Shown here one piece after another: positions 1-63,802 of a stretch of DNA of 64,000 nt. The stretch comes from Styela clava. Taxonomy: Eukaryota. Each line of letters begins with the position of its first letter. Position 1 is the first letter of the stretch. A program made the translations under genes and the position numbers. Where the stretch lies: the NCBI RefSeq assembly GCF_964204865.1, contig NC_135254.1, forward strand, positions 1,426,001-1,490,000, in the 5' to 3' direction. The notes under the pieces were generated by a model, which searched no databases, had not been told where the DNA came from, and was given only the letters and a program-made list of their open reading frames with translations.

Positions 1-482
1 TACACTGAACAGTGATCAGTGAAGTGTGACTGGTCAGAATAATTTTGTGCTTGGTATATTTTATTTAATACTGGCTGGTAGTACTCTGAACAGTGATCAA
101 TGAAGTGTGGCTGGTCAGAATAATTTTGTGCTTGGTATATTTTATTTAATTCTGGCTGATAGTACTCTGAACAGTGATCAATGAAGTGTGGCTGGTCAGA
201 ATAATTTGTGCTTGGTATATTTTATTCAATAGTGGCTGATAGTACTTTGAACAGTGATCAGTGAAGTGTGACTGGCCAGAATAATTTGTGCTTGGTATAT
301 TTTATTCAATACTGGGTGATAGTACTCTGAACAGTGACCAATGAAGTGTGACTGGCCAGAATAATTTGTGCTTGGTATATTTTATTTAATACTGGTTGAT
401 AGTACTCTGAACAGTGATCAGTGAAGTGTGACTGGTCAGAATAATTTGTTGCTTGGTATATTTTATTTAATACTGGCTGATA
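1..482. repeat. Tandem minisatellite, ~80-81 bp unit, 6 copies (may continue left of the window)
   Basis: Unit TACTCTGAACAGTGATCAGTGAAGTGTGACTGGTCAGAATAATTTGTGCTTGGTATATTTTATTTAATACTGGCTGATAG repeats head-to-tail with no spacers. About 1.6 units are at the paralogous site 46668-46800. Confidence 0.95.
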
Positions 483-3390: not shown

Positions 3391-6300
3391 ATGAGTGACC
3401 GACTAGAAGATGTGATCAGAGGATGTGTGAGACAATTTGCTTCAACTGTTGATTTCACAACCTTCGCACAATCTGGGAACGGACTCTCACTCAGTGTGCA
3501 AGATGTCACTACGGTCATTGAAAACCACAGATTCTCTGTTGAAGAACAGAAGAAGAAATTGTTCTGGCTTTGGGTCGAAAGGAACCAACCGAATGTAACA
3601 GCACAAAGGATAAGGAATCTTGTTACACGATACCATGCAGCTGAACAACAAGGCGCTGCTGCTCCTATTGGCAGACTTGAAGATGTTTTTCAAGATGTTA
3701 TTAAACGATTTACATCCAAGGAATTCAAGCAGTTTGCGGGATCAGGGCAGGGATTATCTCTTACTGAGTATGAAGTTGACACTATCACAGAAAATAATAG
3801 ATTCTCAGTGGAGGAGCGAAATCTTAAATTACTGTGGAAATGGAGGCATTCTAAGTATCCAAACACTAATGATGCAGCTGTGATAGAAAGAATAAGAGCA
3901 GTGGTTGGGCTTTATGTTCAAGATGCAAATCGAGTAGAGGAAGAACAGTTCATTCAGGAAGATGGAGACAGAATGCTGGAATCATTCAAAAAACTTTCTG
4001 TGAAACCAACTCAAACAACTGAAGTTTCAGAAGAAAAAGAATTTCTTGAAGTCGTGAAAAATTATACAAAGCAGATGTTGGAATCTCGATTGGAATCCGC
4101 CAGTGAAAAAACAAAAATGGATGATTTTATACTTCCCAAGGTGACTGAGTTCAAGGAATCCGAATCCAACAAACAGAGTAGTTTGCAATCAGTGGATATC
4201 ATGAAGATTCATTATGATAACTCAGTCAACCGTGTGATGTTGCTAGGAGACACAGGCTCAGGAAAAACAACATTCTCGATGAAATATGCATTGTCAGCGT
4301 TAGAAAATAAATTAAACTTTTCGAATGAAATTAAGATGGTCTATTTCGTTGATGTTTCTAATTTACAAGGTGATTCTCAATCAACTGCTTTTGATCTTCT
4401 ATTCGTTCAACAACTTGGTTCGAAACTTCCCGAGCATCTCCATCGTGTTGGACAAAAGTGGTTGAAACTGAATTCAAAACATATTCTACTTGTAGTTGAT
4501 GGGTTGGATCAGAGTCTGAAGCCTTTTGCAAATAATTATGGAAGAATTGGAGTGGACACTCTAGCGGAAACCAACACTATTCTCGCTAATATTTTATCCG
4601 GCCACATGTATCCAGGAATGAAGATTTTGTCAACGACTCGTTGGAATGTTTATTGGAAGTTGCCTCCATCTATCAAGGCCACCTTGAATCTCACCTTAGG
4701 GGGATGGGATGATAAAACACTGGAACTTCTTGCTGGAAAGTTATTTAGTCCTGACGCAAGAAAAATATTTGATGATTTGAGACGTAAAGCACCAGGTTTT
4801 GTTTCAAATCCGATGTTTTTTTTCTACTTGGTTCGAGTTTTAAAAGATTTCAAAGAAAGCGATGTTGATACTTTAACAAATCTGATGGTTTCTGTTTTGA
4901 ACCTTTTTTCAGGATCTCGTCATGGACAAAATGTCGGAAGTCTGTTATTGGAACTCATGAAGTTGGCTTACCACGGAATGATAGAGAATCGATTTGTTTT
5001 CACTGCAAGCTATATTAGATCACTTAAGTTGAATATGAATGACATGCGTGGTCTTGTTGAGATGGATGCTGACACTCGATTTGTTGAGTATGTTGCGGGT
5101 GACAACGACATCAGCTTACGGTTTTCACACCAGAGTATAGGAGAGATACTTGCTGCCCTGTATGCCTGTACTCTTGATTTGGATGAATACAAGAAGTTTA
5201 TCGAGAATTATTATAATAAACCAGGAATGGAAGTCGTTATAAAACATACTTTTGGAATTATTCTCAACAAATCAACTTCAGAAAAAGCAGCAAAATATCT
5301 TCCTGATAACTTGCATATCAAGTCTGAATACCTGATGGGCTACTTGGATAAATTATTGAAAGGAAGAGTCATTTCAGATAAACGAGTCGTGACTTTATTA
5401 CTTGAATGTGGTCCTGATGTGATCAAGAAAGTTTGCTCACAAATAGAAAAGATGGATTTGATGTCAGTCCAACTTGGAGATCAGCATGCAGTGATGTCTG
5501 TTGCTGATCATAGTTTTTCATTTCATACTTTGAAACTATTGAGATTGGAAATACATCCTGGGAATTATTATTTCCTGCAACATGTTCTTGGTTCTGTGCA
5601 GAATGTTGATGTGGAATTCTTCCATCTTATCAATTGTGATTCTGATGCTGAGAATCTTCGAATCCTGAATGAAACCGTGATGAAAGGAAACCTTAAGATT
5701 AGGTGGGACCTCACAATAAGAGAAAGTCCAGCACTTGAACCACTTGGTTATTATTATCTAATTGGATTGGTTTGTCATGGTGGTGCGGAAGGGCTTGAAC
5801 TGAGTGGCTGTGACCTGAATGCAGAGAAAATAAGTAAGATAAACCAAGCAGTCATTGAATATGATGTGAGGTTGAATTCATTGAATATTGATGCGGATCC
5901 TAACATGGATGCAGAAGCATTTCAACAATTGCCCCAATTATTAGGGAATGCAAAGACTGAAGATATCACACTGAATGACTGTGACCTGAATGCAGAGAAA
6001 ATAAGTAAGATGAATCAAGCAGTCATTGAATACGGTGTCAAGTTGGATTCATTGGATATTTATAGGAATCCTAATATGGATGCAGACGCATTTCAACAAC
6101 TGGCAAAGTTTCTGAAAAATACTGAGGTTAAAGATCTGTGGACACAAGATTGCATTCCAACCATTGAGCAGTTATCAGATTTTTGTTCAAGTTTAGAAAA
6201 TGAAGATGTCAAGTTGTCTCGCTTAATCCTGGGAAGATCAACTATAGAATCTCTCACTGATGATGAACTGATGATTGTTTCTAGATTGGTTCAGAGGGTG

Positions 6301-6444
6301 GAAGAGCTCGGGTTTTCTTGTCAAAAGTTGCCTGAGTCAAAGATGGAATTCCTGATTAAGGAAACTGCGAGACTTTGTCCAAGTGCAAAGATGAATAGTG
6401 ACTCATGGACTATCTATATAAGAAATCCAATTGTGAAATGCTGA
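3391..6444 (+). CDS. NLR-A: tandem Death-like domains + NACHT + LRR, single coding exon, 1017 aa from ATG 3391
   Basis: Two ~90-aa N-terminal repeats with a Death-domain-like pattern (LSLTEYEVDTITENNRFSVEERNLKLLWKWR). Walker A GDTGSGKTT, Walker B ILLVVDGLDQ, sensor-1 ILSTTR, NPMF, winged-helix FSHQSIGEILAALY, and RI-like LRRs with a 57-aa double unit. The track's 3319 start is a TTG; a candidate splice acceptor TACAG ends at 3356. Confidence 0.92.
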   Translation: MSDRLEDVIRGCVRQFASTVDFTTFAQSGNGLSLSVQDVTTVIENHRFSVEEQKKKLFWLWVERNQPNVTAQRIRNLVTRYHAAEQQGAAAPIGRLEDVFQDVIKRFTSKEFKQFAGSGQGLSLTEYEVDTITENNRFSVEERNLKLLWKWRHSKYPNTNDAAVIERIRAVVGLYVQDANRVEEEQFIQEDGDRMLESFKKLSVKPTQTTEVSEEKEFLEVVKNYTKQMLESRLESASEKTKMDDFILPKVTEFKESESNKQSSLQSVDIMKIHYDNSVNRVMLLGDTGSGKTTFSMKYALSALENKLNFSNEIKMVYFVDVSNLQGDSQSTAFDLLFVQQLGSKLPEHLHRVGQKWLKLNSKHILLVVDGLDQSLKPFANNYGRIGVDTLAETNTILANILSGHMYPGMKILSTTRWNVYWKLPPSIKATLNLTLGGWDDKTLELLAGKLFSPDARKIFDDLRRKAPGFVSNPMFFFYLVRVLKDFKESDVDTLTNLMVSVLNLFSGSRHGQNVGSLLLELMKLAYHGMIENRFVFTASYIRSLKLNMNDMRGLVEMDADTRFVEYVAGDNDISLRFSHQSIGEILAALYACTLDLDEYKKFIENYYNKPGMEVVIKHTFGIILNKSTSEKAAKYLPDNLHIKSEYLMGYLDKLLKGRVISDKRVVTLLLECGPDVIKKVCSQIEKMDLMSVQLGDQHAVMSVADHSFSFHTLKLLRLEIHPGNYYFLQHVLGSVQNVDVEFFHLINCDSDAENLRILNETVMKGNLKIRWDLTIRESPALEPLGYYYLIGLVCHGGAEGLELSGCDLNAEKISKINQAVIEYDVRLNSLNIDADPNMDAEAFQQLPQLLGNAKTEDITLNDCDLNAEKISKMNQAVIEYGVKLDSLDIYRNPNMDADAFQQLAKFLKNTEVKDLWTQDCIPTIEQLSDFCSSLENEDVKLSRLILGRSTIESLTDDELMIVSRLVQRVEELGFSCQKLPESKMEFLIKETARLCPSAKMNSDSWTIYIRNPIVKC

Positions 6445-7214: not shown

Positions 7215-8907
7215 CTTTAAATGAAGGAATCAGACTATTATTATCACTGGTATATTTATTCTGAATTCTGATTAGATTTATTAGAAACTTTCCATTTTAC
7301 ATATTTTGACTTGATAGAACAGCCACTCAGACGTGCATATTCTTAATTAAATTAAACTGTAAGTTATACATTCTTATTTAGTGTGGCAATATATTTTCAG
7401 TGTGTGTTTATATTTTTAATAAAAATCTTCAAATATTTTACTTAAGTATGCTTTCGTAACTTTTATTCAACTGTTTTGAGGTAATTGATGCACAACTTGC
7501 ACAAGTTAAATTAAATATAATACTTTTTGATCCCTAATGCAACCAATATGTCACAATTCTATTTCTCATCATTGTTCTTTGTTGATGAAGTATAATGCCC
7601 CCATTTTTTATACATTCTTTTATTACTGTAAATATTAACTAATCTGTGTATTCTTGTGATTTAGCTTACTGTAGGCGATAATATATTAAGTCTTGTTTTT
7701 ACAAGAGCATTTTGGGATTTATAACTCATATAGAGATGTAACCTGGATATACTGGGAGTAGCTGTACCTGGGTATACTGAGCTGAACAGTCTGGTGAATG
7801 AAACGAGTAATTCTTGAATGGTTTTCATATTTAATTTTTTGATGAATTTCCAAATTTCCAGTCAAATTTTCTTTGAATTGAAACTGGTTTCGTAAACAGG
7901 TAAAAACATAGTAAATGCTCGTAGAGGGAGAATGTTCAATAAGTGGTCACATTTGGGCACAAAACTCTGTATTTTAAATATTATTTAATTTGGAGGTGTT
8001 TTTCTGATTGCAGATATGGCATAATACGAATGCATTGCCTCAGCGTAAAATAGAGATAAAAAACTGAGTAAATGGAAATGAATACAGATATAAAATGCTA
8101 TTTTTTCTGATGCTGCAACGGCTCTCACCCCTGCGTAACTGTTTTCCCGATATTTCTCTCGCTTTCATTTTGCGTTATAAAGGTGTCTCTACTAATTCCC
8201 GGTGTCTTATGATTAGCCATTTCATGCATGGTCATAACTGAAAAGTTATTATCTGGAGTAACAATGACGTTTTATAAAGTGACGTTTTTGAGAGAGTACA
8301 CAATGAGAAAAAGGCAAATTTAGTGTCAACATTAAACGGTGGTTCTATAAATAGAATCGATTGGAATCTGGTGAGTTGGTAATCACAGAAACATGGTACA
8401 AGTAGCTCAAAGCAATAATGTCAGTTCCGAATTTGTGACCTCCTCAAATTCAATTTTGATTTTCTTTTGATTTATTATCACGATTCACTTTGAAATATAT
8501 CAATTTATAATTTTTAATACCCTTAACATATGCCCATAGTTATATTGAAAAATGTCAGATTAACAATTCTTTTTCCTGGAAATAGCTGGACTGATATTGA
8601 AGTAGCAGGAAAAGTTACAGAATAACATTTGTTCAAGCATTAACTGGACTTAGTTAAATAAAAGTCTCACTGCCATGATAATAAATACCAAAATGAAACT
8701 ACAGGCTCACGAGTTTCGTCATAAAAGCATGGCTCAAAATATGATTTATATTAATATTGGCGTATCGGTTATCGGCCACTAGTTGGCCGATATATCGATA
8801 TCGACGTCAAAAAGTGATATCAATCGAGCTCTCCTTGTAACCGAAACCAATTTTTTTTATCCCTCTCTCTCCCTTCCTCATTAAATAAAAGTTTCTTTCC
8901 TGCTCAG

Positions 8908-9122
8908 AAGATCTCGCCAGACATGCTGGAAGATGATAATTTTTTTGACCTTATCACAAGACTTCAAGGTCGTAGGATGGACGACCAACGATGTGAAATG
9001 AGAGACGACCAATCTGAATTACCAGCGTTTTTAAGACCAAACCCCCCAGATCCCCCCTCAAATCATCACCCCGCGGAGAATGGGGCATTGGAGGGAACGA
9101 GAACTCATTGGAAATGATGGGG
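8908..9122 (+). pseudogene. Orphan GoLoco-motif exon (GPSM1/2-like first GoLoco), copy A
   Basis: Acceptor TTTCTTTCCTGCTCAG, then DDNFFDLITRLQGRRMDDQRCEM (GoLoco pattern FFxLxxxxQxxRMDDQR). Donor GTGAGT at 9123; in-frame stop at 9115-9117 just before it. Confidence 0.8.
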
Positions 9123-9269
9123 GTGAGTCTTCTTCCACAATTTTTTTTTAAATTGTTGCGAGTGGTTAACCCATGGGGAAACAGTAAACAGTGGACATAG
9201 TCATTCTACGATGCAGCTAAAGAGAATATTTTTTTTAATGGATCGTTGTGTTATTATGTTGTTCTTTTT

Positions 9270-9668
9270 ATTTATCGATCTTAAGATCGGTAAGTATATT
9301 GATAGGTATTTGTCTGTATGTATGTCTGTCTGTATGTATGTCTGTCTGTTAGATGCACGCGATATCTCACGAAAGCGAGATTGAATCTGCTCCAGATTTT
9401 GCATGTGCATTCATCTTATCTCGGACCAGTAGCCTATTGATTTTGGGCGAATTATGTCGTATAATTAGCGAGTTATCAATCAATTATTGATATAGTGATC
9501 TAGATTTTTGTAAAGCGAGAGAATTTTGAAACCCGCCGAGTGTGTGTGTGCGATGCGCAGTGCGCAAGTTACAAGAGCGGATGAATCGAAACTGCAGTTT
9601 CTGTTTTGGGGGATCCCCTAACTATCGATCGATAAGTCTTCGGTTTCCAACCGATATTCTCGTTTTTC
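9270..9668 (+). mobile_element. DINE-1/HINE-like non-autonomous Helitron/Helentron-type repeat
   Basis: TGTC/TATG microsatellite near the 5' end, ATCGATC near both ends, 3' hairpin CGGTTTCCAACCG, T-rich insertion site. A reverse-complement copy is at 63803-64000. Confidence 0.6.
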
Positions 9669-49445: not shown

Positions 49446-49602
49446 ATTGGTTCTACTGCAGCGATTCAGGTTGTAATTACCTCTTAGTAGTTGAAGCTAA
49501 CGAAGTGCTCAACCCAACATTCACTCTTTCTTGTTCCTCTCAATACAATAGAGTATTTTGCAATACAGAAATAGTATAGAAGTATCTCCAATTATCGGAA
49601 AC

Positions 49603-52600
49603 ATGAGTGACCGACTAGAAGATGTAATCAGAGGATGTGTGAGACAATTTGCCTCAACTGTTGATTTCAAAACCTTCGCACAATCTGGGAACGGACTCTC
49701 ACTCAGTGTGCAAGATGTCACTATGGTCATTGAAAACCACAGATTCTCTGTTGAAGAACAGAAGAACAAATTGTTCTGGCTTTGGGTTAATAGAAACCAA
49801 CCGAATGTAACTGTACAAAGGATAAGAAATCTTGTTACGCAATACTATGCGCTGGAACAACAAGGCGCTGCCGCTCCTATTGAAAGGCTTGAAGATGTTT
49901 TTCAAGATGTTGCAAAACGATTTTCATCCAAGGAATTCGAGCAGTTTGCGCAGTTTGCAAGATCAGGGCAGGGATTATCTCTTGGAGCACATGAAATAGA
50001 CGAGGTCATGGAAGATTATAAATATACAAGAGAGCGCAAACTTAAATTACTGTGGAAATGGAGGTATTCTAAGTATCCGAATACTAACAATGCAGCAGTG
50101 ATAGAAAGAATAAGAGCAGTGGTTGGACTTTATGTTCAAGATGCAAATCAAGTAGAGGAAGAGCAGATCATTCAGGAAGATGGAGACAGAATGTTGGAAT
50201 CATTCAAAAAACTTTCTGTGAAACCAACTCTACCAACTGAAGTTTCAGAAGAAAAAGAATTTCTTGAAGTCGTGAAAAATTATACAAAGCAGATGTTGGA
50301 ATCTAGATTGAAATCCGCCAGTGAAAAAACAAAAATGGATGATTTTATACTTCCCAGGGTTACCGAGTTCAAGGAATCCAACAAACAGAGTAGTTTGCAA
50401 TCAGTGGATATCAGGAAGATTCATTATGATAACTTAGTCAACCGTGTGATGTTGCTAGGAGACACAGGCTCTGGAAAAACAACATTTTCAATGAAATATG
50501 CATTGTCAGCGCTGGAAAAAAGTTTAAATTTTTCGGACGAAATTAAGATGGTCTATTTTGTGGATGTTTCTAATTTACAAGCGGATTCTAAATCAACCGC
50601 TTTTGATCTTTTATTCGTTCAACAACTTGGATCGAAACTTCCTGAGCATCTCCATCGTGTTGGACAAAAGTGGTTGAAACTGAATTCAAAACATATTCTG
50701 CTTGTAGTTGATGGGTTAGACCAAAGTCTGAAGCCTTTTGCAAATAATTATGGAAGAATTGGAGTGGACACTCTAGCGGAAACCAACACTATTCTTGCTA
50801 ATATTTTATCCGGCCACATATATCCAGGAATGAAGATTTTGTCAACGACTCATTGGAATGTTTATTGGAAGTTGCCTTCAGATCTCAAGGCCACCTTGAA
50901 TCTCACCTTAGGGGGATGGGATGATGAAACACTGAAACTTCTTGCTGGAAAGTTATTTAGTCCTGAAGCAAGAAAAATATTTGATGATTTGAGACGTAAA
51001 GCACCAGGTTTTGTTTCAAACCCGATGTTTTTTTTCTACTTGGTTCGAGTTTTGGAAGATTTCCAAGAAAGCGATGTTGATACTTTAACAAATCTGATGG
51101 TTTCTGTTTTGAAACTTTTTACAGGATCTCGTCAGGGACAAAATGTTGAAAGTCTGTTATTGGAACTCATGAAGTTGGCTTACCACGGAATGATAGAGAA
51201 TCGATTTGTTTTCACTGCAAGCTATATTAGATCCCTAAAGTTGAATATGACTGACATGCGTGGTCTTGTTGAGATGGATGCTGACACTCGAGTTGTTGAG
51301 TATGTTGCGGGTGACGACGACATGAGGTTACGGTTTCCACACCAGAGTATAGGAGAGATTCTTGCTGCCCTGTATGCCTGTACTCTTGATTTGGATGAAT
51401 TCAAGAAGCTTATAGAGAATTATTATGAGAAATCAGGAATGGAAGTCGTTATAAAACATACTTTTGGAATTATTCTCAACAAATCAACTTCAGAAAAAGC
51501 AGCAAAATATCTTCCTGATAACATGCATATCAAGTCTGAATACCTGATGGGCTACTTGGATAAATTATTGAAAGGAATAGTCATTTCAGATAGACGAGTC
51601 GTGACTTTATTACATGAATGTGGTTCTGATGTGATCAAGAAAGTTTGCTCACAAATAAAAAAGATGGATTTGATGTCAGTCCAACCTGGAGAACAGCATG
51701 CAGTGATGTCTGTTGCTGAGCATAGTCCTTCACTTCATACTTTGAAATTATTCTGCTTGTTTGTACATCCTGGAAATTATTATTTCTTGCAACATGTTCT
51801 TGGTTCTGTGCAGAATATTTATGCGGATTACTTCTATCTTAGCAATTGTGACTCTGATGCTGAGAATCTTCGAATCCTGAATGAAGCCGTGATGAAGGGA
51901 AACCTTAAGATTAAGTGGAGCCTCGTAATAAGAGAAAGTCCAGCACTTGAACCACTTGGTTATTATTATCTAATTGGAATGGTTTGTCATGGTAGGCTTA
52001 AACTGAGTAGCTGTGGCCTGAATGCAGAGAAAATAAGCAAGATGAATCAAGCGGTCATTGAATATGGTGTCAAGTTGTTTTCATTGAATATTGAAAAGGA
52101 TCCTAACATGAATGCAGAAGCATTTCAACAATTGCCTCAATTATTAGGGAATGCAAAGACTAATAATCTCACACTGAATGACTGTGGCCTGAATGCAGAG
52201 AAAATAAGTAAGATGAATCAAGCCGTCATTGAATATGGTGTCAAGTTGTTTTCATTGAATATTGAAAAGGATCCTAACATGAATGCAGAAGCATTTCAAC
52301 AATTGCCTCAATTATTAGGGAATTCGAAGACTAATAATCTCACACTGAATGACTGTGGCCTGAATGCAGAGAAAATAAGTAAGATGAATCAAGCCGTCAT
52401 TGAATATGGTGTCAAGTTGGACTCATTGAGGATTGGTGAGAATCCTAACATGGATGCAGAAGCATTTCAACAACTGGCAAAGTTGCTGAAAAATACTGAA
52501 GGAAAGTTTCTGTCTGCACAACATTGCACTCCAACAACTGAGCAGTTATCAGCTCTTTGTTCAAGTTTAGAAAATGAAGATGTCGAGTTGTCTCGCTTAA

Positions 52601-52722
52601 ACCTGGGAAGATCAACTACAGAATCCCTCACTGATGATGAACTGATGATTGTTTCTAGATTGGTTCAGAGGGCGAGAAAGCTCGAGTTCTTTTGTCAAGA
52701 GTTGTCCGAGTCAAAGATGTAA
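49603..52722 (+). CDS. NLR-B: tandem Death-like domains + NACHT + LRR, 1039 aa, with a late premature stop
   Basis: Paralog of NLR-A with the same Walker A/B and three 171-bp LRR units (CGLNAEK codons start 52012, 52183, 52354). TAA at 52720 replaces GAA of copy A, and the homologous frame continues 33 codons to TAG at 52822-52824. Confidence 0.9.
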   Translation: MSDRLEDVIRGCVRQFASTVDFKTFAQSGNGLSLSVQDVTMVIENHRFSVEEQKNKLFWLWVNRNQPNVTVQRIRNLVTQYYALEQQGAAAPIERLEDVFQDVAKRFSSKEFEQFAQFARSGQGLSLGAHEIDEVMEDYKYTRERKLKLLWKWRYSKYPNTNNAAVIERIRAVVGLYVQDANQVEEEQIIQEDGDRMLESFKKLSVKPTLPTEVSEEKEFLEVVKNYTKQMLESRLKSASEKTKMDDFILPRVTEFKESNKQSSLQSVDIRKIHYDNLVNRVMLLGDTGSGKTTFSMKYALSALEKSLNFSDEIKMVYFVDVSNLQADSKSTAFDLLFVQQLGSKLPEHLHRVGQKWLKLNSKHILLVVDGLDQSLKPFANNYGRIGVDTLAETNTILANILSGHIYPGMKILSTTHWNVYWKLPSDLKATLNLTLGGWDDETLKLLAGKLFSPEARKIFDDLRRKAPGFVSNPMFFFYLVRVLEDFQESDVDTLTNLMVSVLKLFTGSRQGQNVESLLLELMKLAYHGMIENRFVFTASYIRSLKLNMTDMRGLVEMDADTRVVEYVAGDDDMRLRFPHQSIGEILAALYACTLDLDEFKKLIENYYEKSGMEVVIKHTFGIILNKSTSEKAAKYLPDNMHIKSEYLMGYLDKLLKGIVISDRRVVTLLHECGSDVIKKVCSQIKKMDLMSVQPGEQHAVMSVAEHSPSLHTLKLFCLFVHPGNYYFLQHVLGSVQNIYADYFYLSNCDSDAENLRILNEAVMKGNLKIKWSLVIRESPALEPLGYYYLIGMVCHGRLKLSSCGLNAEKISKMNQAVIEYGVKLFSLNIEKDPNMNAEAFQQLPQLLGNAKTNNLTLNDCGLNAEKISKMNQAVIEYGVKLFSLNIEKDPNMNAEAFQQLPQLLGNSKTNNLTLNDCGLNAEKISKMNQAVIEYGVKLDSLRIGENPNMDAEAFQQLAKLLKNTEGKFLSAQHCTPTTEQLSALCSSLENEDVELSRLNLGRSTTESLTDDELMIVSRLVQRARKLEFFCQELSESKM

Positions 52723-53834: not shown

Positions 53835-55053
53835 TTAACCTCAAATTAAACTGAAAATTACTGAAATCCTTAATTACTGTAGCAAGATATTTTCAGTGTG
53901 TGTTTGTAATCTTCAAATGTTTTTATTAAGTAGGCTTTGTAATTTTCATGTAACTGATTAATAAGGTAAAATTAAATTTCATATCTTTATCCTGTATTAA
54001 TTTTTGAGTTCCATTATATACATAATCTAGCATGTTACTCGCTGTTCTATTCGAAATATATATATCAATTCTTATTACCGTGGTCATTTTAAATTGTATA
54101 GTAGGTTTTGTAATATTTATGCTCTTGATTTATGAAACTGTTTTATGGGGTAAAATCAAATTTATTATCTTCGGCCTGTAATGATTTTTTATCCTCAATA
54201 TATACCCAATCTAACATGGTACTCCCTATTCCATTCAATATGTTCCAATTCTTATATCCTCAATTACTGTGGTAATTTTAAATTGTATTCATAATGTTCA
54301 AATATTTAAATTTTTATGCAACTGTTTTATGAGGTGAAATTAAATTTATCATCATTTTCCTGTAATACTTTTTGATCCCTAATGCAACCAATATGTCACA
54401 ATTCTATTTTTAACCACTGTTTTTTGTTGATGAAGCATATCCCCCATATTCATGATGCCACATAACTCTTGTATAATTTAACATATCCTATACATTTTTT
54501 TATTGCTGTAAATATTGACTAATCTGTGTGTTCTTGTGATTTTAGCCTTAGCTTACTGTAGGCAATAATATATTAAGCCATGTTTCTACAAGAGCATTTT
54601 GGGATTCATAACTCATATAGAGATGTAACCTGGATATACTGGGAGTAGCTGTACCTGGGTATACTGTTCCTATTGAGAGTAGCTGAACAGTCCGATGAAT
54701 GAAACGAGTAAGTCTTGAATGTTTTTTATATTCAACTTTTTAATGAATTTCCAAATTTCCAGTCAAATTTTCTTTGAATAGAAACTGGTTTCGTAAAGAG
54801 TTAAAAACATAGTAAATGCTCGTAGAGGGAGAATGTTCAATAAGTGGTCACATTTGGGCACAAAACTCTGTATTCTAAATGGTATTTAATTTGAAGGTGT
54901 TTTTCTGGAGGGAATATCGTTTTTCCTTTTTTTCTGCTCAGCCATATATATTTAAGAGTCTATTCGATATTGCGGAAATGGCATAATACGAATGTTGTCC
55001 TATTTGATATTGGCTCAGCGTAAAATAGAGATAAAACTGCACTTAATAATAAC

Positions 55054-56027: not shown

Positions 56028-58568
56028 ATAATGACCAATATTTTTCATGTTTTACTTTTGAATAAAAAATCCTTCTCAAAATTTGAAATTCATCCTCACT
56101 CTCACTGTCAAACTGCTGTCCCTTTAGTGCGATCAGAGTTATGCGTGTATAAACCGACTCTTAGCTTGGGAACTTTTTATTTTGAGTTTTAAATCGGCTT
56201 ATTTGCGATGATATACAGTATACGCTTTTGACCCCCAAACAAGGCTGGGAGTAAATTTCCTTTGTCTCCTCAGCATTATTTAAATGTCCATAACTAATGA
56301 TCATGGCAAACTAAAAACACAATCTCTCAATTTTTTTAATTACTCGTATGAAAATGAGAAGGAATTATTTAGTGCTTGTAACAGGAGCCAATTCTTTATC
56401 CCCCCTTCCCCCCACATCAAATAAAAATTTCTTTCCTGCTCAGAAGATCTCGCCAGACATGCTGGAGGATGACAATTTCTTTGACCTTATCACAAGACTT
56501 CAAGGTCGTAGGATGGATGATCAACGATGTGAAATGAGAGACGACCAATATGAGTTACCTGCGTTTTTAAGACCTAACCCCCCAGACCCTCCCTCAAATC
56601 ATCACCCTGCAGAGAATGGGGCAATGGGGGGATGATAACCCATTGGAAATGATGGGGGTGAGTATTCTTTTATTATTTTTTTTGAAAAACTGAGAAACAG
56701 TCATTTTCGTGGGCATGTTCACAACAACATTGCTATCGTTGATAAATAAAGCACAGTCAGTGTTATGAATATACCTGGTGGCAATCATACAGTGTTTTGT
56801 TACTATGTTGTTCTTTTTTTCATGTTGGTATAGTTGTTAATTGTTTCGAAATTTTCAGTGGTTAAAGGTTGTATTTTTCACTAAGCGGATATTTTATTTA
56901 TTTCAAAAACTCTCTGGGATTCGTTTTTCATTATGACATTTTGAGAGGTCATGTCGTCGAAATTAATATTTACGCACCTTGTTGGGGTTCTGCATTCACA
57001 TTTGTTACATCCTGGTGGTCAGTCGAAGTCGTGAAGACTGCAGTGCCGGTATTTTTTGCTAGAATGCTATTACTTGTATTTGTTCCTGAATTTTTCTGTG
57101 AGATTTGATATTTCATCTAAAATCCGCTATAGTTTTTATTTATGGGAACATGTTTTTATGACATCGTGATGACTGCCTTCCTCGTTTTTATGACATCGTG
57201 ACAGCGGGTAACATAGTATACTGTAATAGATTGCTACACTCGTACTACTTTGTTTATGTCTTTGTGTCCAAATGTTTGAGCATCGTTCTCTTATTCTCTT
57301 AGACGGTCAACATCAGCAAATTTCAACAATGATGAATATGTTAGCAAACTCGCAATCTAAACGCATGGATGGGCAAAGGGTGAGTCTCTCTGGACTTCCT
57401 GGGTTAAGGGTCAACGATGGGGTCAATGGCGAAGGAGCGTCAATCTGCAACAACCAGATGGCGCTGCAGCTCCCTTACCAGGTATAGTGTTTTTTTATAC
57501 AACACATATTCACATCTTCCACTCTGAATTAGATCCTAAACAAGCAAATATGAGTCTCCTTTTTTTCTGAAAAAGTGCACATAGCCTCGGATTTAGCTGA
57601 TATCATTACAATGCTCGTCCATAACTGTTTTAGGCAAGTGTGCATCACGCACCACTATCAGTCTTTAGAATAGGATTTTACAAATTTATCTCAGGGAGAG
57701 GAAAGCCGATAATGTGGATTAATCATATGGTGAACCACGGATTCTCATCAGGTTATCATTCCAGGTCAGGTATGGAATTGTTTAGCCAGTTATTTGTTCC
57801 AGAAGCATGGACTTGATGGTGAAGGAAGCGTTACGTGAACCACCCTAAGATGGTGGGAAGTCCAGTAATCCTCTCGCACATAATTAATCCAGCGTGGGAT
57901 TCGAAGGGTATCTTGGCAGCGTAATCAGAGGTGCAGTAACAAGCGTATTTCTAACGCTTAGCAGCAGTGCCAAAACCGGCTGAATTTAAAGGGAAAATTT
58001 TTTTGTAGCTATATGTCATGAAAAAGAGTTGAATAAATAATTGAAGAGTTGAATAAATGATAATAAATAACGGATTGTTAACAAACGATAATGAATAAAC
58101 GGATAATAAACCTAGTTTTCATCACATAATTTAGAGTCTTGATAGTTTTGATTCGAAGGAGAATGATCTCGATTCCAAGGTCTCGTGTGCCGAACAAATG
58201 GGTTGCCCACCCCTGGTCTATGCAATCAAGTAGCACTTTGCCATTTCAGGGGTTGCTTGTAACTTCGTTCAGTTATTTCCGAGCGAGTAAAAGTGACCTC
58301 TCTTAGAGAAATTTCCCTAAAAAAATCAAAGTTTTCCGTTGTTTTCATTCTTCCTTTTCAGTAGCTCTTCGACCAAGACTGGAAAACGGTGGAATACCAG
58401 GAAATGAAAACAGACATTCACTCGATGACACATTTTTTAACGCTCTCATGAGATGCCAGGTGAGTGTTTTGTGAGGAGAGTTTACAATATCACTCTGACA
58501 AAGACGTAAGAGGAGCCTACTATACTCATCAGTAGGGCTACCATTTCTAATCAATTAATAAATTATTA

Positions 58569-58785
58569 GGTACTCCTGTAGTATGTGAACCGACATGGCG
58601 GACATCGGAACGTAGTATGTGTATCAGGTTAGGGTTAGGACATAATTTTATTCCAGTTTTCTTTATTTTAGTTCTATTACGAGTTCGGGGACTAGCCAAG
58701 TTATGAAATTAAGGCCTAATCCTAACCTGGTACACATACTACGTTCCAGTGTCCGCCATCTTGGTTTACATACTTCGGGAGTACC
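58569..58785. mobile_element. Palindromic MITE with TTAGGG-like core
   Basis: ~85-bp inverted arms GGTACTCC...GGTTAGGGTTAGG / CCTAATCCTAACC...GGAGTACC. Confidence 0.85.
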
Positions 58786-59146
58786 AATTATACGCATTGG
58801 TTTAGACGGCAGCCATCTTGTTTTTGTCCGCCCGCAGGTCGAGATGAATCCCTCATGTTTTTTCATTCATGTCAAATTTTAAAATGCAATTCTGTCATAT
58901 GAGTGAGTTATTGATGAAACATATTTCTTATTGTGTGTGAACTGTCCAGGTGATAGATTACGTGTTTTCAGTTATGTGGACCCATAACAATATAACAGCC
59001 ACATACAACTACATGTATTCCAAGTATTCGAGATTCGAAAAAATGTTTGATTTGATTCTGAAATCATCAGATATTCGAAAATGCCCAGTTCTACTCATGA
59101 GTGAGTGCAAGTCACCTTGATTTGAGCAAAAAAAAAAAATAGGTAT

Positions 59147-59340
59147 GGTACTCTTGTAGTGTGTGAACCAAGATGGCGGACACGGGAACGTAGTATGTGT
59201 ACCGGTTTAGGATTAGGCCATAATATCAGATACAGATTTAAAATAAGGAAAATTGGAATAAAAATATGGCCTAACCCTAACCTGGCACACTTACTACGTC
59301 CCGGTGTTCGCCATCTTGGTTCACATACTACGGGAGTACC
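59147..59340. mobile_element. Palindromic MITE, same family
   Basis: GGTACTCTTGTAGTGTGTGAACCAAGATGGCG / CGCCATCTTGGTTCACATACTACGGGAGTACC. Confidence 0.85.
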
Positions 59341-61049
59341 CAAAAATCTATTCTATAAGGCTACAATTTTTTATCAGAACCTGATCAAAATAAATATTTA
59401 GACCCAATTTTTTTTTGTTTGTTTCAGAGCACGAAGTAAAATGACCAGCGCTCGTCACCTCCCATATTCGACGCTCCGGTGCTGCTAACACCCACTATCC
59501 CAGACGAAGATTGATTGTTCGAATGCAATCGTCAAGAATTGAGGACCAGCGCTGCCGTTTTGGTCCCAAATGGGAATCCCCTCATAATGTGGAACCCGAT
59601 AATGACGACATATCACAGTAAATGTGGGACATATTCCGATGCCCACTGTGGCACTAAATGGTTGTTGTAAATCTGTTCTGTGGCATTTTTGTGATGCCTT
59701 GTTTTTTACTCAGTGGCATCAGATATGTGCCATGCCACTTGTCATGCCGCACCTCACATCTTGCCGTGTTTTATTACATGAGAGCCATGGCACCTACCAA
59801 ACGGCATAGAATAGCCACCATTGTTTTGCTCATTGTGTTTTAAAACAATGACGTTTTATAAAAATTGTGGCATCAAAAGTGTACTAATGCCATGTAACAT
59901 GGTTCCTGTGTTTCAGGCAGTGGCATCAAAACAAACCATGCCACCTACTAGCGTGGCATGGAGAGAATTATTTTCATTGGAAAGACACACACTGCCCTGA
60001 GACTTTGGAGACACTGAGGCTTTCAATAATGCCTTGAAATCAATTTGATGCCCAATTTAAATGCCATGCTGCCATAGTAAATATCATCCAACTATGGGTT
60101 TAGGGATTGACCTCCCATTTTCTTTGTCATGGTTAAGATGCCGCTAACTTCCTGTGCCACCATTATAGATGTTTTTGCTGCCATGTAGTAATTTTATTTC
60201 TAATTATGTCACGCTTGAGCTAACATTGTGCAGTTGTAGAAATGAAATATTGATTATGCATCATAAATACAGTGCTTGAAATAAGCCATTAATTGTGAAG
60301 TAACCAACTTTGGTCAGGCCTCTGAAGTAGGAAGAAATTTACGCACTGACTTGAAAAAATATTTCGCATGTATGTATAGTTATTAGCCTCAAAATTTGAA
60401 AGCGCCCGCATGATTAAATAAAGATTAACAAGGCCTTAACTGGCCTAAGACACAGTTGTCTGACATCTATTCTTCACTAACAGAACAACAGTTAAAGACT
60501 ACCATGTTGAAATAGGACAATACACATGGAAATATAGAAGTAAAACTCAAGCGCAGTGGTTCCCAAGTGGGGGCCCCGTAACCCCCCAAAGGGGCCACAA
60601 AGCAATTGTGGGGGGGCCACAACGTTAGGCTCAAAATGATCTTCTTTCAATATCAATAAAACAAAAATCGCAAAAAATTCTTAATACGTTTAATATCATG
60701 AAAAAAAAACTTGCCAAACTCTGAAAATTTAGGATGTGCTCCCAACACGAACTCTAAAAAAAAAAGGAGTTTTGGACTACAAAAACTTCTGGCATGTTCA
60801 GGCCTCAAAGCGCTCCGAATATCTACTTCCAGAGCCATAAAGTGGAGGGTTTCAAAATATCGAACATCAATGAAATCGTGTCAAACTCTCACCCTACAGG
60901 CTGGCCTTCATTACTAACATCGATGAAAAAATTTAATAATCAAAATCTACAACTCTTCTACACATTAGCTGCTTTAATAGTTTTTTGTTTCAACTTTGTG
61001 TCTGTTTATCAAGTTTAGTTTATTTCAGTACGATTTCTTTGAATAATCA

Positions 61050-61395
61050 TTGAGGTGTGACTGGCCAGAATAATCTAATGTAAAGGTGTCAGTGCTGCTA
61101 TTTTCAAGCTTTAATACTATTTCCTTTAATATTACTTATTAAGGCGTGACTGGCCAGAATATTCTCATGCTAATGTAATGGTGTCAGTGCTGCTATTTTC
61201 AAGCTTTAATACCATTTCCTTTAATATTAATTATTAAGGCGTGACTGGCCAGAATATTCTCATGCTAATGTAATGGTGTCAGTGCTGCTATTTTCAAACT
61301 TCAGTACAATTTCTTTTATTATAACCATTGAGGCGTGTCTGGTCAGAATTATCTAATGCTAGTATAAAGGTGTCAGTGCTGCTATTTTCAAACTC
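61050..61395. repeat. ~90-95-bp tandem repeat, ~3.7 copies
   Basis: AGG(C/T)GTGACTGGCCAGAAT...GGTGTCAGTGCTGCTATTTTCAA is repeated four times. Confidence 0.9.
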
Positions 61396-63802
61396 CCTTA
61401 TTTTTGATGTTGAATCACACTGAAGTTAACTTGACCTCTTTTTCAACTGCTGCAAAGTTTTTTAATGTGAATATTGTTTCAGATTTCATTTCTATGATCG
61501 TAATTTGCAAAAATCAGAATCTGGGAAAATGTTGTAATTCACCTTTCTCATACCTGATTTAAGACCAGGGCTTCAGAGCCGGTGAAATTTATAATCGACT
61601 GCCGACTTTATGTTGGAAAAATTTTTCATTCGGCTGATCGTAGGGAAAATTAAATCTTGATTATGAAACTCTGGCATCTGCAAGTTTCCTTAATTGTTTA
61701 TTTAAAACGGTGAGGTAAAGCATACCCTCTAAAAATGGCTCGGAACGATTATTTTTTTCGTGTGTGTGTGCACTCTTATCATGAAAACGTTAGTTTGAGT
61801 ACTAACTTCTCATTCACCGCTATGTTTCTTTATCATAGATGTGAGATAGCTTTGGCAATACAGTGGTTGCCTTTAAGTTCACCAAAAATGAGTCTACGTT
61901 GCTTCTGAGTGAGTGTAAACGCCTTGCTTTGAGTAAATTATTTCTCAGTCAAGTCGCTTCTGTACCGGGTCAAGGTTGATGTTTAATTAATTCAACTTTT
62001 TTCATTTTCTTCTTGTTTTATTAACACTGTACTTCTTAGCCCGGTGATGTTTTTTCATTTTGAACTAATTTTTTCTGTTTTTTTTTTCTTATTTTTATTC
62101 ATTTTTGAGTGAATTCTGTTAAGAAAAAAGGGTGGCGTTCTCTTCAATGCATAATTTGCAATTCCGAATCCAAAATGTTTCTGAATCTGAATGTATCAGG
62201 CCATGTTCAGAAACATTTTTCCACAAATTATTGGGCGTTCCAGAAGTATGTGTACCAATATGGAGATATCTAATTTTGTTCGCCTATTTTACATCAAGTT
62301 GTGTAAAGGGACTGAAACCTACGGGCAGGGGGTATATTCACTTGACTAATACAAACAGTTCCCGGGACTCTTAATAGAACTAAAATAAGGAAAATTGGAA
62401 TAAAGTTATGGCCTAACTCTGACCTGGTACACATACTATATAATAAAAATTATGAATGAATAGCCCTAGTTTTTGTAGCAAGATAACTCTTTATAACTAA
62501 ATTTATTTCTAATCATGTTTGTAAATACTAATCTAATTAAATTTCTAATTAAAAATGTTATCAATTTTTTTGTTAAAAATAGCTTTCCCTGGTTGCGGTA
62601 ATCACACATAAGAGACCACCACTCAGCCCCAATAGTAGTTACCCTGGCGCAGCAGTTCCTAACAAGGGGCCGTCGCCGTTAAATAGGGGTCACAAGGTGC
62701 AGAACAGATTTTACTTGTTCCTTGACAAGAAAACTTCCTAGTTTCGTTGCTTGATAAGGTTGTTTCACAGGGTCTAATCACTTTGAGCATGAATTGTTTG
62801 AAACTAATGGGATTTGGAATCTACCAATCATAATATAACACTCTAAATACCACTGGGCCATGAGGCTTAGAAACCTTTGGAAGGGGGGTCACAAGCCATA
62901 AAAGGTTGGGGACCTCTGCTATATTGTCAGAGTTTAGCAAACTTGTGCAAAACTTTGACTTTATCCATTTTTAAGGCGTTATTGCTTTGAACGAGAATCC
63001 AGTGAAAATTCACTGAAAAATGCAAAACCCCACTTATTCTCCCGATTCGATATTGCCTACCCAGTTTCTTATACACTTGTCAGGGTGGCTAACATGAGGT
63101 TTGAACCTGGGATCTCTAACTTGTGTCCAGCCAATACTGCCAGGTGCCACATCTTTTGCTGTGATTATCAGATTTTTTATGTGTTTGCAACTTTTATTGT
63201 TTTCTTTACTGAAGGTTTGGCAAGTTTCTGTCTGTATGTGCTGACGCAAATTTACAATAATTAAAGCAAAATGTGGTAGATATGCATGTTGATTGATTTG
63301 TATTTTTGAAGGGGAAGTTCTGGAACAAGTCGGGAATTTAGATTTCTAATTGTTAACTTGACAAAGCTTTCTAAATTGACAGTTACAGGAGGTTTGCATA
63401 TGCCGAGGTATTTGGATCAAAAATTTGATTTTTCTGGAGCCCAGAGCTGGAGTCGAAAAATTTCTTTCTGGAAGTTTGATTTAAATTGATCTATAGAGAC
63501 GCCTAAGATGATACTTAGATCTTCTAACATTGCTTCCCAAAGTTGATTGACAAGGGCCGAAAATAAAAGGGGATGGATACTTATTTGCAAGAGGCTGTGA
63601 CACCAATTGGAACCGGAACCGCTTCAACTTCAGCGAGCCATATTAAATCGTTCCGGACCTCGGTTTGGGGGCGACTGTTCTAAACCTTTGGAGAAATTGG
63701 CTCAATCTCATGACAAACTAGCAGACTTTTGCTTGGAAATTTTAACCAGGTGACTGTACTAGTAGTCTGTCGCACAGTCCCGGTCCTGATTCTGAAATAT
63801 AT

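What the first reader, a model, noticed from the sequence alone, without database searches (positions are those of the whole stretch)
8908..9122. GoLoco exon travels with each NLR and differs almost only at silent sites
Seen: over the first 60 codons of the two copies (8908 vs 56444) I count 12 synonymous changes and 1 replacement (TCT/TAT), with acceptor and donor retained. This is the opposite of the adjacent LRR pattern. Established: GoLoco motifs bind G-alpha-i/o-GDP and inhibit nucleotide release. Inference: either the exon stayed functional after duplication (a small GoLoco peptide from the in-exon ATG, or spliced to NLR transcripts as an integrated domain linking NLR and G-protein signalling), or the two copies derive from diverged versions of a functional GPSM gene. 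An NLR-GoLoco cassette is not an arrangement I know of.
Basis: partly seen in the sequence, partly recalled or inferred. Interest (0 to 1): 0.85.

Follow-up and report, generated by a model that had tools for sequence, protein, structure and literature searches.

The report
Headless GPSM exon copies beside NLRs
The GoLoco exon next to each immune-receptor (NLR) gene is a leftover of a partial copy of the sea squirt's own GPSM2-like gene; it was kept under protein-level selection for a long time, but it is not joined to the NLR protein and is now truncated or broken in every copy.

Summary
The exons at 8908-9122 and 56444-56657 encode a true GoLoco motif. Over 60 codons they differ by 12 silent changes and 1 replacement, and both keep the AG acceptor and GT donor.

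Copy A has a +1 frameshift and a stop at 9115-9117. Copy B has TGA TAA at 56633-56638.

The genome is Styela clava. All its GoLoco motifs lie in 8 clusters on one contig:
- the intact parent, a GPSM2-like gene of 685 aa with TPR repeats and four GoLoco motifs;
- seven TPR-less partial copies.

Six of 11 clustered NLR paralogs carry a copy 2.5-3.7 kb downstream. One has a stump, four have none, and one copy has no NLR.

Selection on the protein is real. A's silent-site divergence from the parent matches the flanking introns, while replacement sites are about 20-fold more conserved. B's exon was probably also homogenised with the parent by gene conversion.

An NLR-GoLoco fusion is not supported. 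The NLR reading frames end in their own stops, and the only exon seen spliced into the GoLoco acceptor has an in-frame stop three codons before the junction. I found no RNA of copy A.

My best reading is that these are decaying relics of a once-functional GoLoco-only gene that hitch-hiked with NLR duplication. A still-active small GoLoco peptide is not excluded.

The parts
8908..9122 (+). GoLoco1 exon, copy A. In-exon ATG at 8923; GoLoco core at codons 10-31 (8935-9000); +1 frameshift near 9094; stop at 9115-9117. It is the only GPSM-derived piece left at this locus.
56444..56657 (+). GoLoco1 exon, copy B. First 63 codons intact, then TGA TAA at 56633-56638.
57303..57481 (+). GoLoco2 exon of copy B. 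It differs from the parent by 8 silent changes and 2 replacements, then has a -1 frameshift near 57428-57440.
58340..58456 (+). Exon of copy B holding the first half of GoLoco3 (approximate limits). One replacement relative to the parent.
59428..59621 (+). Last GPSM exon of copy B. A 10-bp deletion at about 59510 removes the start of GoLoco4 and creates a stop after PDED. The deletion is shared by copies B, c1, c4, c5 and c6.
56246..62147 (+). Whole block of copy B that is colinear with the 3' half of the parental GPSM2-like gene and its downstream flank (79-97% identity). Homology starts about 200 nt upstream of the GoLoco1 exon and includes no TPR exons.
3391..6444 (+). NLR-A: intronless Death-Death-NACHT-LRR ORF with its own stop codon.
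49558..52722 (+). NLR-B: paralogous Death-NACHT-LRR ORF with its own stop codon.
7609..8006 (+). Conserved element downstream of every NLR of this subfamily. It contains a short exon ending at 7806, followed by a GT donor. In the GoLoco frame the exon ends TGA ATG AAA CGA.
54489..54907 (+). The same conserved element in cassette B. The exon ends at 54707, with a GTAAGT donor.
8076..8870 (.). Repeat or transposon-like stretch that replaces the GPSM intron upstream of copy A to within about 74 nt of the acceptor. It shows high RNA-contig depth with variable internal joints.

Best explanation
The exon is the first GoLoco exon of a 'headless' partial duplicate of the Styela clava GPSM2-like (LGN/Pins-type) gene.

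Shown:
- A segmental duplication placed the 3' half of GPSM, which holds the GoLoco exons but no TPR exons, 2.5-3.7 kb downstream of a Death-NACHT-LRR gene.
- NLR plus headless GPSM was then copied as a cassette within a 570-kb cluster that also contains the parent gene.
- The exon's silent sites have diverged about as much as the adjoining introns, while replacement sites hardly changed.
- Every copy now has lesions. Copy A keeps one exon with a frameshifted tail. Copy B has stops, a frameshift and a truncated last exon.

Inferred:
- The headless copy was translated for most of its history as a TPR-less, GoLoco-only protein able to bind G-alpha-i/o-GDP. This is the same domain layout as vertebrate GPSM3.
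- Copies B and c4 were also refreshed by gene conversion from the parent.
- The copies are now decaying in a birth-and-death fashion.
- Where a copy is still transcribed, the GoLoco exon is reached from a non-coding exon of the NLR cassette. It therefore behaves as a downstream or 3' exon, not as an NLR domain.
For: 1. Origin.
- All GoLoco matches in the 377-Mb genome lie in 8 clusters on contig C5 between 0.92 and 1.49 Mb.
- One cluster is the intact 685-aa GPSM2-like gene, with a TPR exon and an exon that reads through to its donor.
- Copy B is colinear with the parent's 3' half and downstream flank.

2. Cassette structure.
- NLR paralogs sit upstream of six copies.
- Cassettes B, c4, c5, c6 and c1 are colinear over 9-10 kb at 92-94% identity.
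- A and c2 are 98.5% identical over 3.3 kb.

3. Selection.
- A versus the parent: 11 silent changes to 2 replacements (pS 0.30, pN 0.014). A versus B: 12 to 1.
- The flanking 60-100 nt differ by 14-29%.
- The model 'copy neutral, parent constrained' (omega 0.5) is rejected at P = 3e-4 to 5e-3.
- Parsimony on the ML tree gives 10 silent changes to 3 replacements on the path from the cassette root to A. Two of the three replacements are a P39S change and its reversal. Copies c1, c5 and c6, which are broken within the first 60 codons, give 9 to 11.
- B's GoLoco2 exon shows the same pattern, 8 to 2.

4. Decay.
- Private or shared frameshifts, stops, a lost acceptor (c6) and loss of the key arginine (c4).
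- A 10-bp deletion in the last exon is shared by five copies.

5. No fusion with the NLR.
- The NLR ORFs have their own stops.
- There is an in-frame TGA three codons before the 7806 junction.
- The RefSeq NLR models found have Death and NACHT domains only.

6. Transcription.
- One RNA-type contig joins 7806 to 8908 with GT..AG ends, but its letters match sister copy c1.
- RefSeq models c1 as a 166-aa 'GPSM2-like' protein.
Against: - Lesions spare the motif. All five independent frame-breaking lesions fall after codon 47 and never in the GoLoco core or its C-terminal extension. Random placement would give this with P of about 0.005, although that region is rich in C and G runs that are prone to indels. 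This pattern would also fit ongoing selection for a short single-GoLoco product.
- No test of recent relaxation. The A/c2 pair is too young (1.5% divergence) to show whether constraint relaxed after the frameshift.
- Reticulate history. The region contains mosaics and a recombinant copy (c1), so tree-based counts are approximate. The contrast between the path to A and the dead copies is only P = 0.09 under the most conservative count.
- Weak RNA evidence. It rests on short contigs from four runs of guessed type, which cannot show absence of expression.
Confidence: 0.55

Rival explanations
1. The exon is still functional. Copies A/c2 and B each encode a short stand-alone GoLoco peptide of about 58-72 aa. 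It would start at the in-exon ATG (8923) or at the ATG in the last three codons of the cassette exon (7798) and end at the new stops. It would act on G-alpha-i/o or on the neighbouring NLR.
For: - The first 60 codons are intact and strongly constrained in A, c2 and B.
- The in-exon ATG, the acceptor and the donor are kept in nearly all copies.
- All frame-breaking lesions lie after codon 47.
- A GT..AG joint from 7806 to 8908 exists in RNA-type contigs.
- The ATG at 7798 is in frame and conserved.
- RefSeq predicts a protein starting at the in-exon ATG on copy c1.
- TPR-less GoLoco proteins exist in vertebrates, and GPSM3 binds the LRR domain of NLRP3 (PMC9141484).
Against: - None of the RNA-type runs holds A-specific 31-mers beyond 2 of 20.
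- No contig covers 9071-9250 in four runs. The contigs on 8908-9070 carry letters of the parent or of copy c1.
- A 5.8-billion-protein collection contains no predicted S. clava protein of 38-120 aa with this sequence.
- Sister copies with the same layout are clearly dead.
- The cassette exon with the ATG is equally conserved next to NLRs that have no GoLoco exon.
Confidence: 0.22
2. There was never any independent constraint. The silent-only pattern arises solely because dead copies are repeatedly overwritten by gene conversion from the functional parental exon at different times.
For: - B and c4 match the parent at 4/59 and 0/46 mismatches in the 60 nt upstream of the exon, and at 6/180 and 4/171 in the first 60 codons. 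The exon tail (7/34) and the further introns differ by 21-29%.
- The GoLoco1 block is only about 85% identical between B and c5 or c1, inside cassettes that are otherwise 92-94% identical.
Against: - A's silent sites are as diverged from the parent (pS 0.30) as the introns are, so A was not recently converted. Even so, its replacement sites differ at only 2 of 143.
- No other gene in the genome carries A-type silent states.
- B's GoLoco2 exon has pS 0.29 against the parent but pN 0.019.
Confidence: 0.1
3. The GoLoco exon is spliced onto NLR coding sequence and forms an integrated C-terminal domain that links NLR and G-protein signalling.
For: - The exon lies downstream of the NLR on the same strand, 2.5-3.7 kb away, in six cassettes.
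- It starts in phase 0 with a strong acceptor that is used in RNA.
Against: - The NLR ORFs stop at 6444 and 52722, and the paralogs align to within 2 residues of that stop.
- The only exon seen joined to the acceptor has a conserved in-frame TGA three codons before the junction.
- No joint from NLR coding sequence was found.
- The RefSeq NLR models found lack GoLoco.
- No NACHT domain was found in ten of the longest GoLoco proteins of a 1.84-billion-protein search.
- No paper mentions both GoLoco and NACHT.
Confidence: 0.03

Closest known systems
GPSM2/LGN/Pins family; here the parental Styela clava 'G-protein-signaling modulator 2-like' gene, XP_077968687.1
   Same: The first 35 residues of the exon, which include the GoLoco1 core, are identical to the parent's. 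Intron positions, the phase-0 start and the splice signals are shared. Copy B keeps the exon order GoLoco1, 2, 3 and 4 and the parent's downstream flank.
   Different: There are no TPR exons, and homology starts inside the intron before GoLoco1. Copy A has one exon only. Every copy has premature stops or frameshifts. An NLR lies where the TPR half should be.
TPR-less GoLoco proteins of vertebrates: GPSM3/AGS4/G18 (three GoLoco motifs) and PCP2/L7
   Same: The domain layout is the same: GoLoco motifs with no TPR or other domain. The ancestor of copies B, c1, c4, c5 and c6 would have encoded GoLoco1-3 and then stopped. GPSM3 is reported to bind the LRR domain of NLRP3 and to dampen the inflammasome (PMC9141484), so a functional link between a GoLoco protein and an NLR has precedent.
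   Different: The origin is independent: a recent tunicate-specific partial duplication. No protein or function is shown here, and most copies are broken. Adjacency to the NLR may be pure hitch-hiking.
Unprocessed (duplicated) pseudogene fragments carried along in tandem NLR cluster expansion
   Same: Introns are retained. The copy number tracks the neighbouring gene family. Lesions are private, copies are mosaics produced by recombination and gene conversion, and transposons have invaded.
   Different: Replacement sites are about 20-fold more conserved than the flanks over a divergence of about 0.3 per silent site, which simple dead fragments should not show.
NLRs with integrated extra domains (for example plant NLR-IDs)
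   Same: An unrelated signalling module sits next to an NLR and is duplicated with it.
   Different: There is no shared reading frame or splice path. The defining feature was tested and not met.

Membership tests
GoLoco motif (Pfam PF02188) | Match to the family profile above the curated cut-off | tested here: met
   42.8 bits against a cut-off of 25.1, E 3.5e-11. The six-frame genome scan gave 44.3 bits for both A and B.
GoLoco motif (Pfam PF02188) | Conserved core ending in the Asp/Glu-Gln-Arg triad, whose arginine contacts GDP | tested here: met
   A, c2 and B read RRMDDQR, identical to the parent, and align with GPSM2 GoLoco motifs in PDB 4jhr and 4g5s. Sister copy c4 has the arginine replaced by glutamine. 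Binding to G-alpha was not tested.
GPSM2/LGN/Pins proteins | N-terminal TPR repeats in the same gene | tested here: not met
   Homology of copy B to the parent begins about 200 nt upstream of the GoLoco1 exon. No parental TPR exon has a counterpart in the window. The parent has a TPR exon at C5:1024886-1025020.
GPSM2/LGN/Pins proteins | Four GoLoco motifs in one open reading frame | tested here: not met
   A has one exon and a stop at codon 70. B has stops at codons 64-65, a -1 frameshift in the GoLoco2 exon and a 10-bp deletion before GoLoco4.
Paralog (partial duplicate) of the S. clava GPSM2-like gene | Colinear nucleotide homology including introns and the downstream flank | tested here: met
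   Copy B at 56246-62147 matches C5:1005252-1000001 in order and orientation at 79-97% identity. An ML tree places all copies with the parent.
NLR with an integrated domain | The extra domain is part of the NLR reading frame, either directly or by splicing | tested here: not met
   NLR stops at 6444 and 52722. The exon joined to 8908 has an in-frame TGA three codons before the junction, conserved in all 11 cassettes. The RefSeq NLR models found have Death and NACHT only.
TPR-less GoLoco proteins (GPSM3/PCP2-like) | An expressed, translated ORF consisting only of GoLoco motif(s) | tested here: inconclusive
   ORFs of 64 aa (A) and 58 aa (B) exist from the in-exon ATG. RefSeq models one on sister copy c1. 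No RNA of the A type was found and no such small protein is in the collection.
Unprocessed pseudogene | Disabling lesions relative to the parent, with intron structure retained | tested here: met
   Each of the seven copies has a frameshift, a stop, a lost splice site or a large deletion. Whether the truncated first 60 codons still function is open.

The most novel reading that the evidence does not exclude
A TPR-less, GoLoco-only gene born by partial duplication of GPSM has been kept and co-amplified with a Death-NACHT-LRR subfamily as a functional pair. It would be transcribed from the NLR cassette through the conserved exon ending at 7806, possibly in an operon-like or trans-spliced arrangement of the kind known in tunicates. 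It would act on the NLR or on G-alpha-i signalling in immune cells, as an independent tunicate counterpart of the mammalian GPSM3-NLRP3 interaction.
Probability: 0.15. Interest if true: 0.75.

Novelty: new member of a known kind. Interest (0 to 1): 0.38.

Why it matters
The result removes an attractive but unsupported idea, an NLR with an integrated G-protein module. It replaces that idea with a documented history: a partial duplicate of a polarity and G-protein regulator that rode along with an expanding immune-receptor cluster.

The unexpected part is that the fragment was protected at the protein level over a silent-site divergence of about 0.3. That implies a TPR-less GoLoco protein existed in this tunicate lineage, next to NLRs. 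Mammalian GPSM3, which has the same layout, is reported to bind the LRR domain of NLRP3. The locus is therefore a cheap place to test whether GoLoco-NLR coupling is older or more general than thought.

It is also a cautionary example. Silent-only differences between paralogs can coexist with truncation, gene conversion and present-day decay.

Tried and rejected
I could not see the public gene calls around the NLRs or fetch the contig of the related-species protein P0046.
- The look-up of sequencing runs found no run on record as RNA that holds the A exon. The best RNA-type run held 2 of 20 words.
- Read laying (one call allowed) used short Logan contigs from four runs of guessed type. It cannot show strand, transcript ends or absence. 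The contigs on 8908-9070 carry letters of the parent or of copy c1, so they are not evidence for copy A.
- Comparing A with c2 to test for constraint after the frameshift failed for lack of divergence (98.5% identity). An earlier estimate of 4-5% from 160 nt of flank was noise.
- Global alignments of highly diverged introns are rough. Values above about 0.25 come with many gaps.
- Rfam found nothing credible between 6400 and 9400.
- Pfam scans of ten of the longest GoLoco proteins from the 1.84-billion-protein search showed TPR or GoLoco only, and no NACHT.
- Literature: no paper holds both GoLoco and NACHT, and none holds GPSM3, NLRP3 and GoLoco together.
- I did not build or search a joined model of the 7806 exon plus the GoLoco exon. 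Reading frames across the junction were worked out from the separate exons only.
- No G-alpha complex prediction was run, because the motif is identical to the parent's and no tunicate G-alpha sequence was available by reference.

Full report
**What is at the coordinates**

The stretch 8908-9122 and its counterpart 56444-56657 are bounded by an AG acceptor and a GT donor. Both translate in phase 0 to a peptide containing a textbook GoLoco motif: Pfam PF02188, E 3.5e-11, 42.8 bits against a cut-off of 25.1. The peptide also aligns to the GoLoco motifs of GPSM2 in PDB entries 4jhr and 4g5s.

Over the first 60 codons the two copies differ at 13 positions. Twelve are synonymous third-position changes and one is a replacement, TCT/TAT at codon 36. 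Nei-Gojobori counting gives pS 0.327 and pN 0.007. Fisher's test gives P = 9e-9. Against neutral silent fractions of 0.21-0.30, computed for this exon with kappa 1-6 and a 10-fold CpG rate, the binomial P is 6e-8 to 5e-6.

Omega between the two NLR ORFs is 1.95 and 1.02 across alignment codons 600-900.

Neither copy reads through to its donor. Copy A has a one-base insertion near 9094 and stops at 9115-9117. Copy B has adjacent TGA and TAA codons at 56633-56638. The parental exon is open to the donor and continues into the next exon.

**Whose exon it is**

The NLR ORFs match 'uncharacterized protein [Styela clava]' entries. The window is contig C5:1426001-1490000 of a 377-Mb assembly.

A six-frame scan of the whole genome with the GoLoco profile places every significant match on C5 between 0.92 and 1.49 Mb, in eight clusters. 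The cluster at 1,002,436-1,025,020+ on the minus strand has four motifs and a typical LGN-type TPR exon. It corresponds to RefSeq 'G-protein-signaling modulator 2-like', XP_077968687.1, 685 aa. Its exon before GoLoco1 ends in phase 0, which confirms the frame.

The other seven clusters are headless. I call them c1, c2, c4, c5 and c6, plus A and B in this window.

Copy B is colinear with the parent from about 200 nt upstream of the GoLoco1 exon, through the GoLoco2, GoLoco3 and last exons, and on for more than 2 kb beyond the gene. Identity along this stretch is 79-97%. No parental TPR exon has a counterpart in the window. Copy A and its recent twin c2 (98.5% identical over 3.3 kb) keep only a block of about 320-440 nt around the exon, set between repeats and a retrotransposon.

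**Relation to the NLRs**

A search with the NLR-A protein finds 11 close paralogs in the same 570-kb region.

| Group | Members | State |
|---|---|---|
| NLR with GoLoco1 exon 2.5-3.7 kb downstream, same strand | A, B, c1, c2, c4, c5 | exon present |
| NLR with a stump | NLR at 981 kb | intron plus the first 39 nt of the exon |
| NLR with no GPSM-derived DNA within about 9 kb | NLRs at 903, 1153, 1283 and 1340 kb | none |
| GoLoco copy without an NLR | c6 | no NLR within 10 kb upstream |

More distant NLR paralogs elsewhere in the genome cannot have the exon, because there are no GoLoco matches outside the cluster. Cassettes B, c4, c5, c6 and c1 are colinear over 9-10 kb at 92-94% identity. 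NLR plus headless GPSM was therefore copied as a unit, and 'each NLR' overstates the link.

**Is the GoLoco exon part of the NLR protein?**

The evidence says no.
- The NLR ORFs end at 6444 and 52722, and the paralogs align to within two residues of that stop.
- A 400-nt element (7609-8006; 54489-54907 in B) follows every NLR of this subfamily, including those without GoLoco and a distant paralog at 5.2 Mb. It contains a short exon ending at 7806 with a conserved GTAAGT-type donor.
- In one RNA-type run a contig joins 7806 to 8908 with GT..AG ends (depth 67.6, 21 nt on the shorter side). The GoLoco acceptor is therefore used from a cassette exon. In the GoLoco frame that exon ends TGA ATG AAA CGA in all cassettes, so no upstream reading frame can pass through it.
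- No joint from NLR coding sequence was seen, and contig coverage stops between about 6680 and 7480.
- The RefSeq NLR models found carry only Death and NACHT domains.
- None of the ten long GoLoco proteins I scanned, out of 288 hits in 1.84 billion representatives, has a NACHT domain.
- No open paper contains both words.

The frames were read from the separate exons.

**Is copy A expressed?**

I found no sign of it.
- A-specific 31-mers are absent from seven RNA-type runs, apart from 2 of 20 words in one run.
- No contig covers 9071-9250 in the four runs I laid.
- The contigs on 8908-9070 carry the parental letters at 8937, 8943 and 8985. One of them continues upstream into the parental exon, so it is parental mRNA cross-mapping.
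- The contig covering 8937 and 8943 in the run that shows the joint has T at 8937 and C at 8943, which fits sister copy c1. I take the joint contig to be of the same type, although its depth differs slightly (67.6 against 63.8).

Copy c1 is the copy RefSeq models as a 166-aa 'GPSM2-like' protein starting at the in-exon ATG (XP_077968728.1). An older RefSeq release also modelled 100-112-aa proteins from headless copies, ending at the shared PDED stop. A 5.8-billion-protein collection holds no S. clava protein of 38-120 aa with this sequence. These are short contigs from runs of guessed type, so absence is not shown.

**Why the differences are silent**

Ten of the 13 differences between A and B, nine silent and one replacement, are states specific to A/c2. 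Three silent ones are specific to B.

The immediate flanks of A differ from those of B, of the c5 type and of the parent by 14-29%. That is similar to A's silent-site divergence of 0.20-0.33. The exon's silent sites therefore evolve at about the local neutral rate, and A was not recently overwritten by any other copy. Yet A differs from the parent at only 2 of 143 replacement sites.

If A had been neutral since separating from a fully constrained parent, pN/pS would be 0.5. That model is rejected at P = 3e-4 to 5e-3.

The ML tree of exon plus flanks is (parent,(B,c4)),((c5,c6),(c1,(A,c2))), with three of the five inner forks well supported, one moderately, and the parent/B/c4 fork unresolved. 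Parsimony on this tree gives:

| Lineage | Silent | Replacement |
|---|---|---|
| Cassette root to A | 10 | 3 (two are P39S and its reversal) |
| c1, c5, c6 (broken within the first 60 codons) | 9 | 11 |

The direct contrast between the two rows is only P = 0.09 under this conservative count.

B's GoLoco2 exon repeats the pattern against the parent, with 8 silent changes to 2 replacements (pS 0.29, pN 0.019). For c5 and c6 the counts are 6 to 7 and 5 to 5.

I conclude that the headless gene was translated and constrained for most of its history. Because the cassettes share the NLR junction, this was probably while it lay next to an NLR.

**A second process at B**

B and c4 match the parent almost perfectly from 60 nt upstream of the exon to codon 60, but not beyond.

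| Segment | B vs parent (mismatches) | c4 vs parent (mismatches) |
|---|---|---|
| 60 nt upstream of the exon | 4/59 | 0/46 |
| First 60 codons | 6/180 | 4/171 |
| Exon tail | 7/34 | deleted in c4 |
| Further introns | 26-29% | 25-28% |

The GoLoco1 block is also only about 85% identical between B and c5 or c1, inside cassettes that are otherwise 92-94% identical. A gene-conversion tract of about 240 bp from the parent is the simplest reading. This inflates the A-B silent distance: pS is 0.33, against 0.05-0.25 for the NLR ORFs.

**Present state**

Every copy is damaged relative to the parent.

| Copy | Lesions |
|---|---|
| A, c2 | +1 frameshift; all downstream GPSM exons lost |
| B | two stops, a -1 frameshift in the GoLoco2 exon, the 10-bp deletion |
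| c1 | -1 frameshift and four replacements |
| c5, c6 | a shared 4-bp deletion; c6 also has the acceptor changed from CAG to CAC and a replacement in the core |
| c4 | the GDP-contacting arginine replaced by glutamine; two in-frame deletions |

The 10-bp deletion that stops the last exon before GoLoco4 is shared by B, c1, c4, c5 and c6. Their ancestor would therefore have encoded GoLoco1-3 only, which is the GPSM3 layout.

All five independent frame-breaking lesions in the GoLoco1 exon fall after codon 47. That is unlikely by chance (about 0.005), but the region is rich in C and G runs. For this reason I keep a still-active single-GoLoco peptide as the main rival, at 0.22.

**Comparison with known systems, and verdict**

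The exon is a member of the GoLoco motif family and a paralog of the S. clava GPSM2-like gene. It is not a GPSM2/LGN-type gene, because it has no TPR repeats and no four-motif ORF. It is not an integrated NLR domain.

In layout it resembles the TPR-less GoLoco proteins GPSM3 and PCP2. A review reports that GPSM3 suppresses NLRP3 by binding its LRR domain (PMC9141484). A functional GoLoco-NLR link therefore has precedent in trans, but nothing here shows it.

Best explanation, at 0.55: these are decaying relics of a once-functional headless GPSM that hitch-hiked with NLR duplication, and B was also refreshed by conversion from the parent. This is a new member of known kinds (partial gene duplicate, GoLoco-only gene) and of moderate interest.

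Noticed in passing
window 7807-8006 (also 54708-54907 and nine other cassettes on C5): The roughly 200 nt after the conserved donor at 7806 are more conserved among the NLR cassettes than the NLR coding sequence itself, with long invariant runs across 10 of the 11 copies (the 903-kb copy has most of it deleted). They are also found, at 87% identity over about 70 nt, next to a distant NLR paralog at C5:5.20 Mb. This could be a 3'-UTR exon after a 48-nt intron, or a regulatory element. Rfam has no match.
   Followed up: partly
window 53121-53838: A 718-nt stretch downstream of NLR-B is 98.2% identical to part of an intron of the parental GPSM2-like gene (C5:1013150-1013865). This is far higher than the surrounding homology, so it is either a young mobile element or a recent conversion.
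   Followed up: no
window 59920-62147: The DNA beyond the last GPSM exon of copy B is 92-97% identical to the DNA beyond the parental gene's 3' end, whereas the introns around GoLoco2 are only 79% identical. The duplicate is a mosaic of different ages.
   Followed up: partly
L033 (C5:1312001-1320000) and L032 (C5:1305001-1315000): Headless GPSM copy c6 has no NLR within 10 kb upstream, and its GoLoco1 acceptor is mutated from CAG to CAC. It shares a 4-bp frameshift with c5.
   Followed up: partly
L034:4701-4943 (C5, about 978.7 kb): The NLR at 981 kb keeps only the intron and the first 39 nt of the GoLoco1 exon, of the B type. The rest is replaced by unrelated sequence.
   Followed up: partly
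window 125-524 and 46605-46844: An 80-nt tandem repeat array lies upstream of both NLR genes, with four units in A and about two in B.
   Followed up: no
window 5799-6269 and 52002-52472: A 171-nt LRR module is present twice in NLR-A and three times in NLR-B. Omega between the two NLRs exceeds 1 in this part.
   Followed up: partly
window 9259-9491, 63802-64000: A short repeat of about 230 nt flanks copy A downstream. It occurs at least four times in introns of the parental GPSM gene and is probably a MITE-like element.
   Followed up: no
window 9693-10957, 25069-26187, 34779-38936: Retroelement ORFs: integrase zinc-binding domain plus DUF5641; a Ty1/copia-type reverse transcriptase; and a LINE with endonuclease and reverse transcriptase preceded by an ORF with a baculovirus FP domain.
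   Followed up: no
P0046 (83 aa, Logan contigs, unnamed): A related but unidentified organism has a GoLoco1 exon 85-88% identical in its first 42 residues.
   Followed up: no
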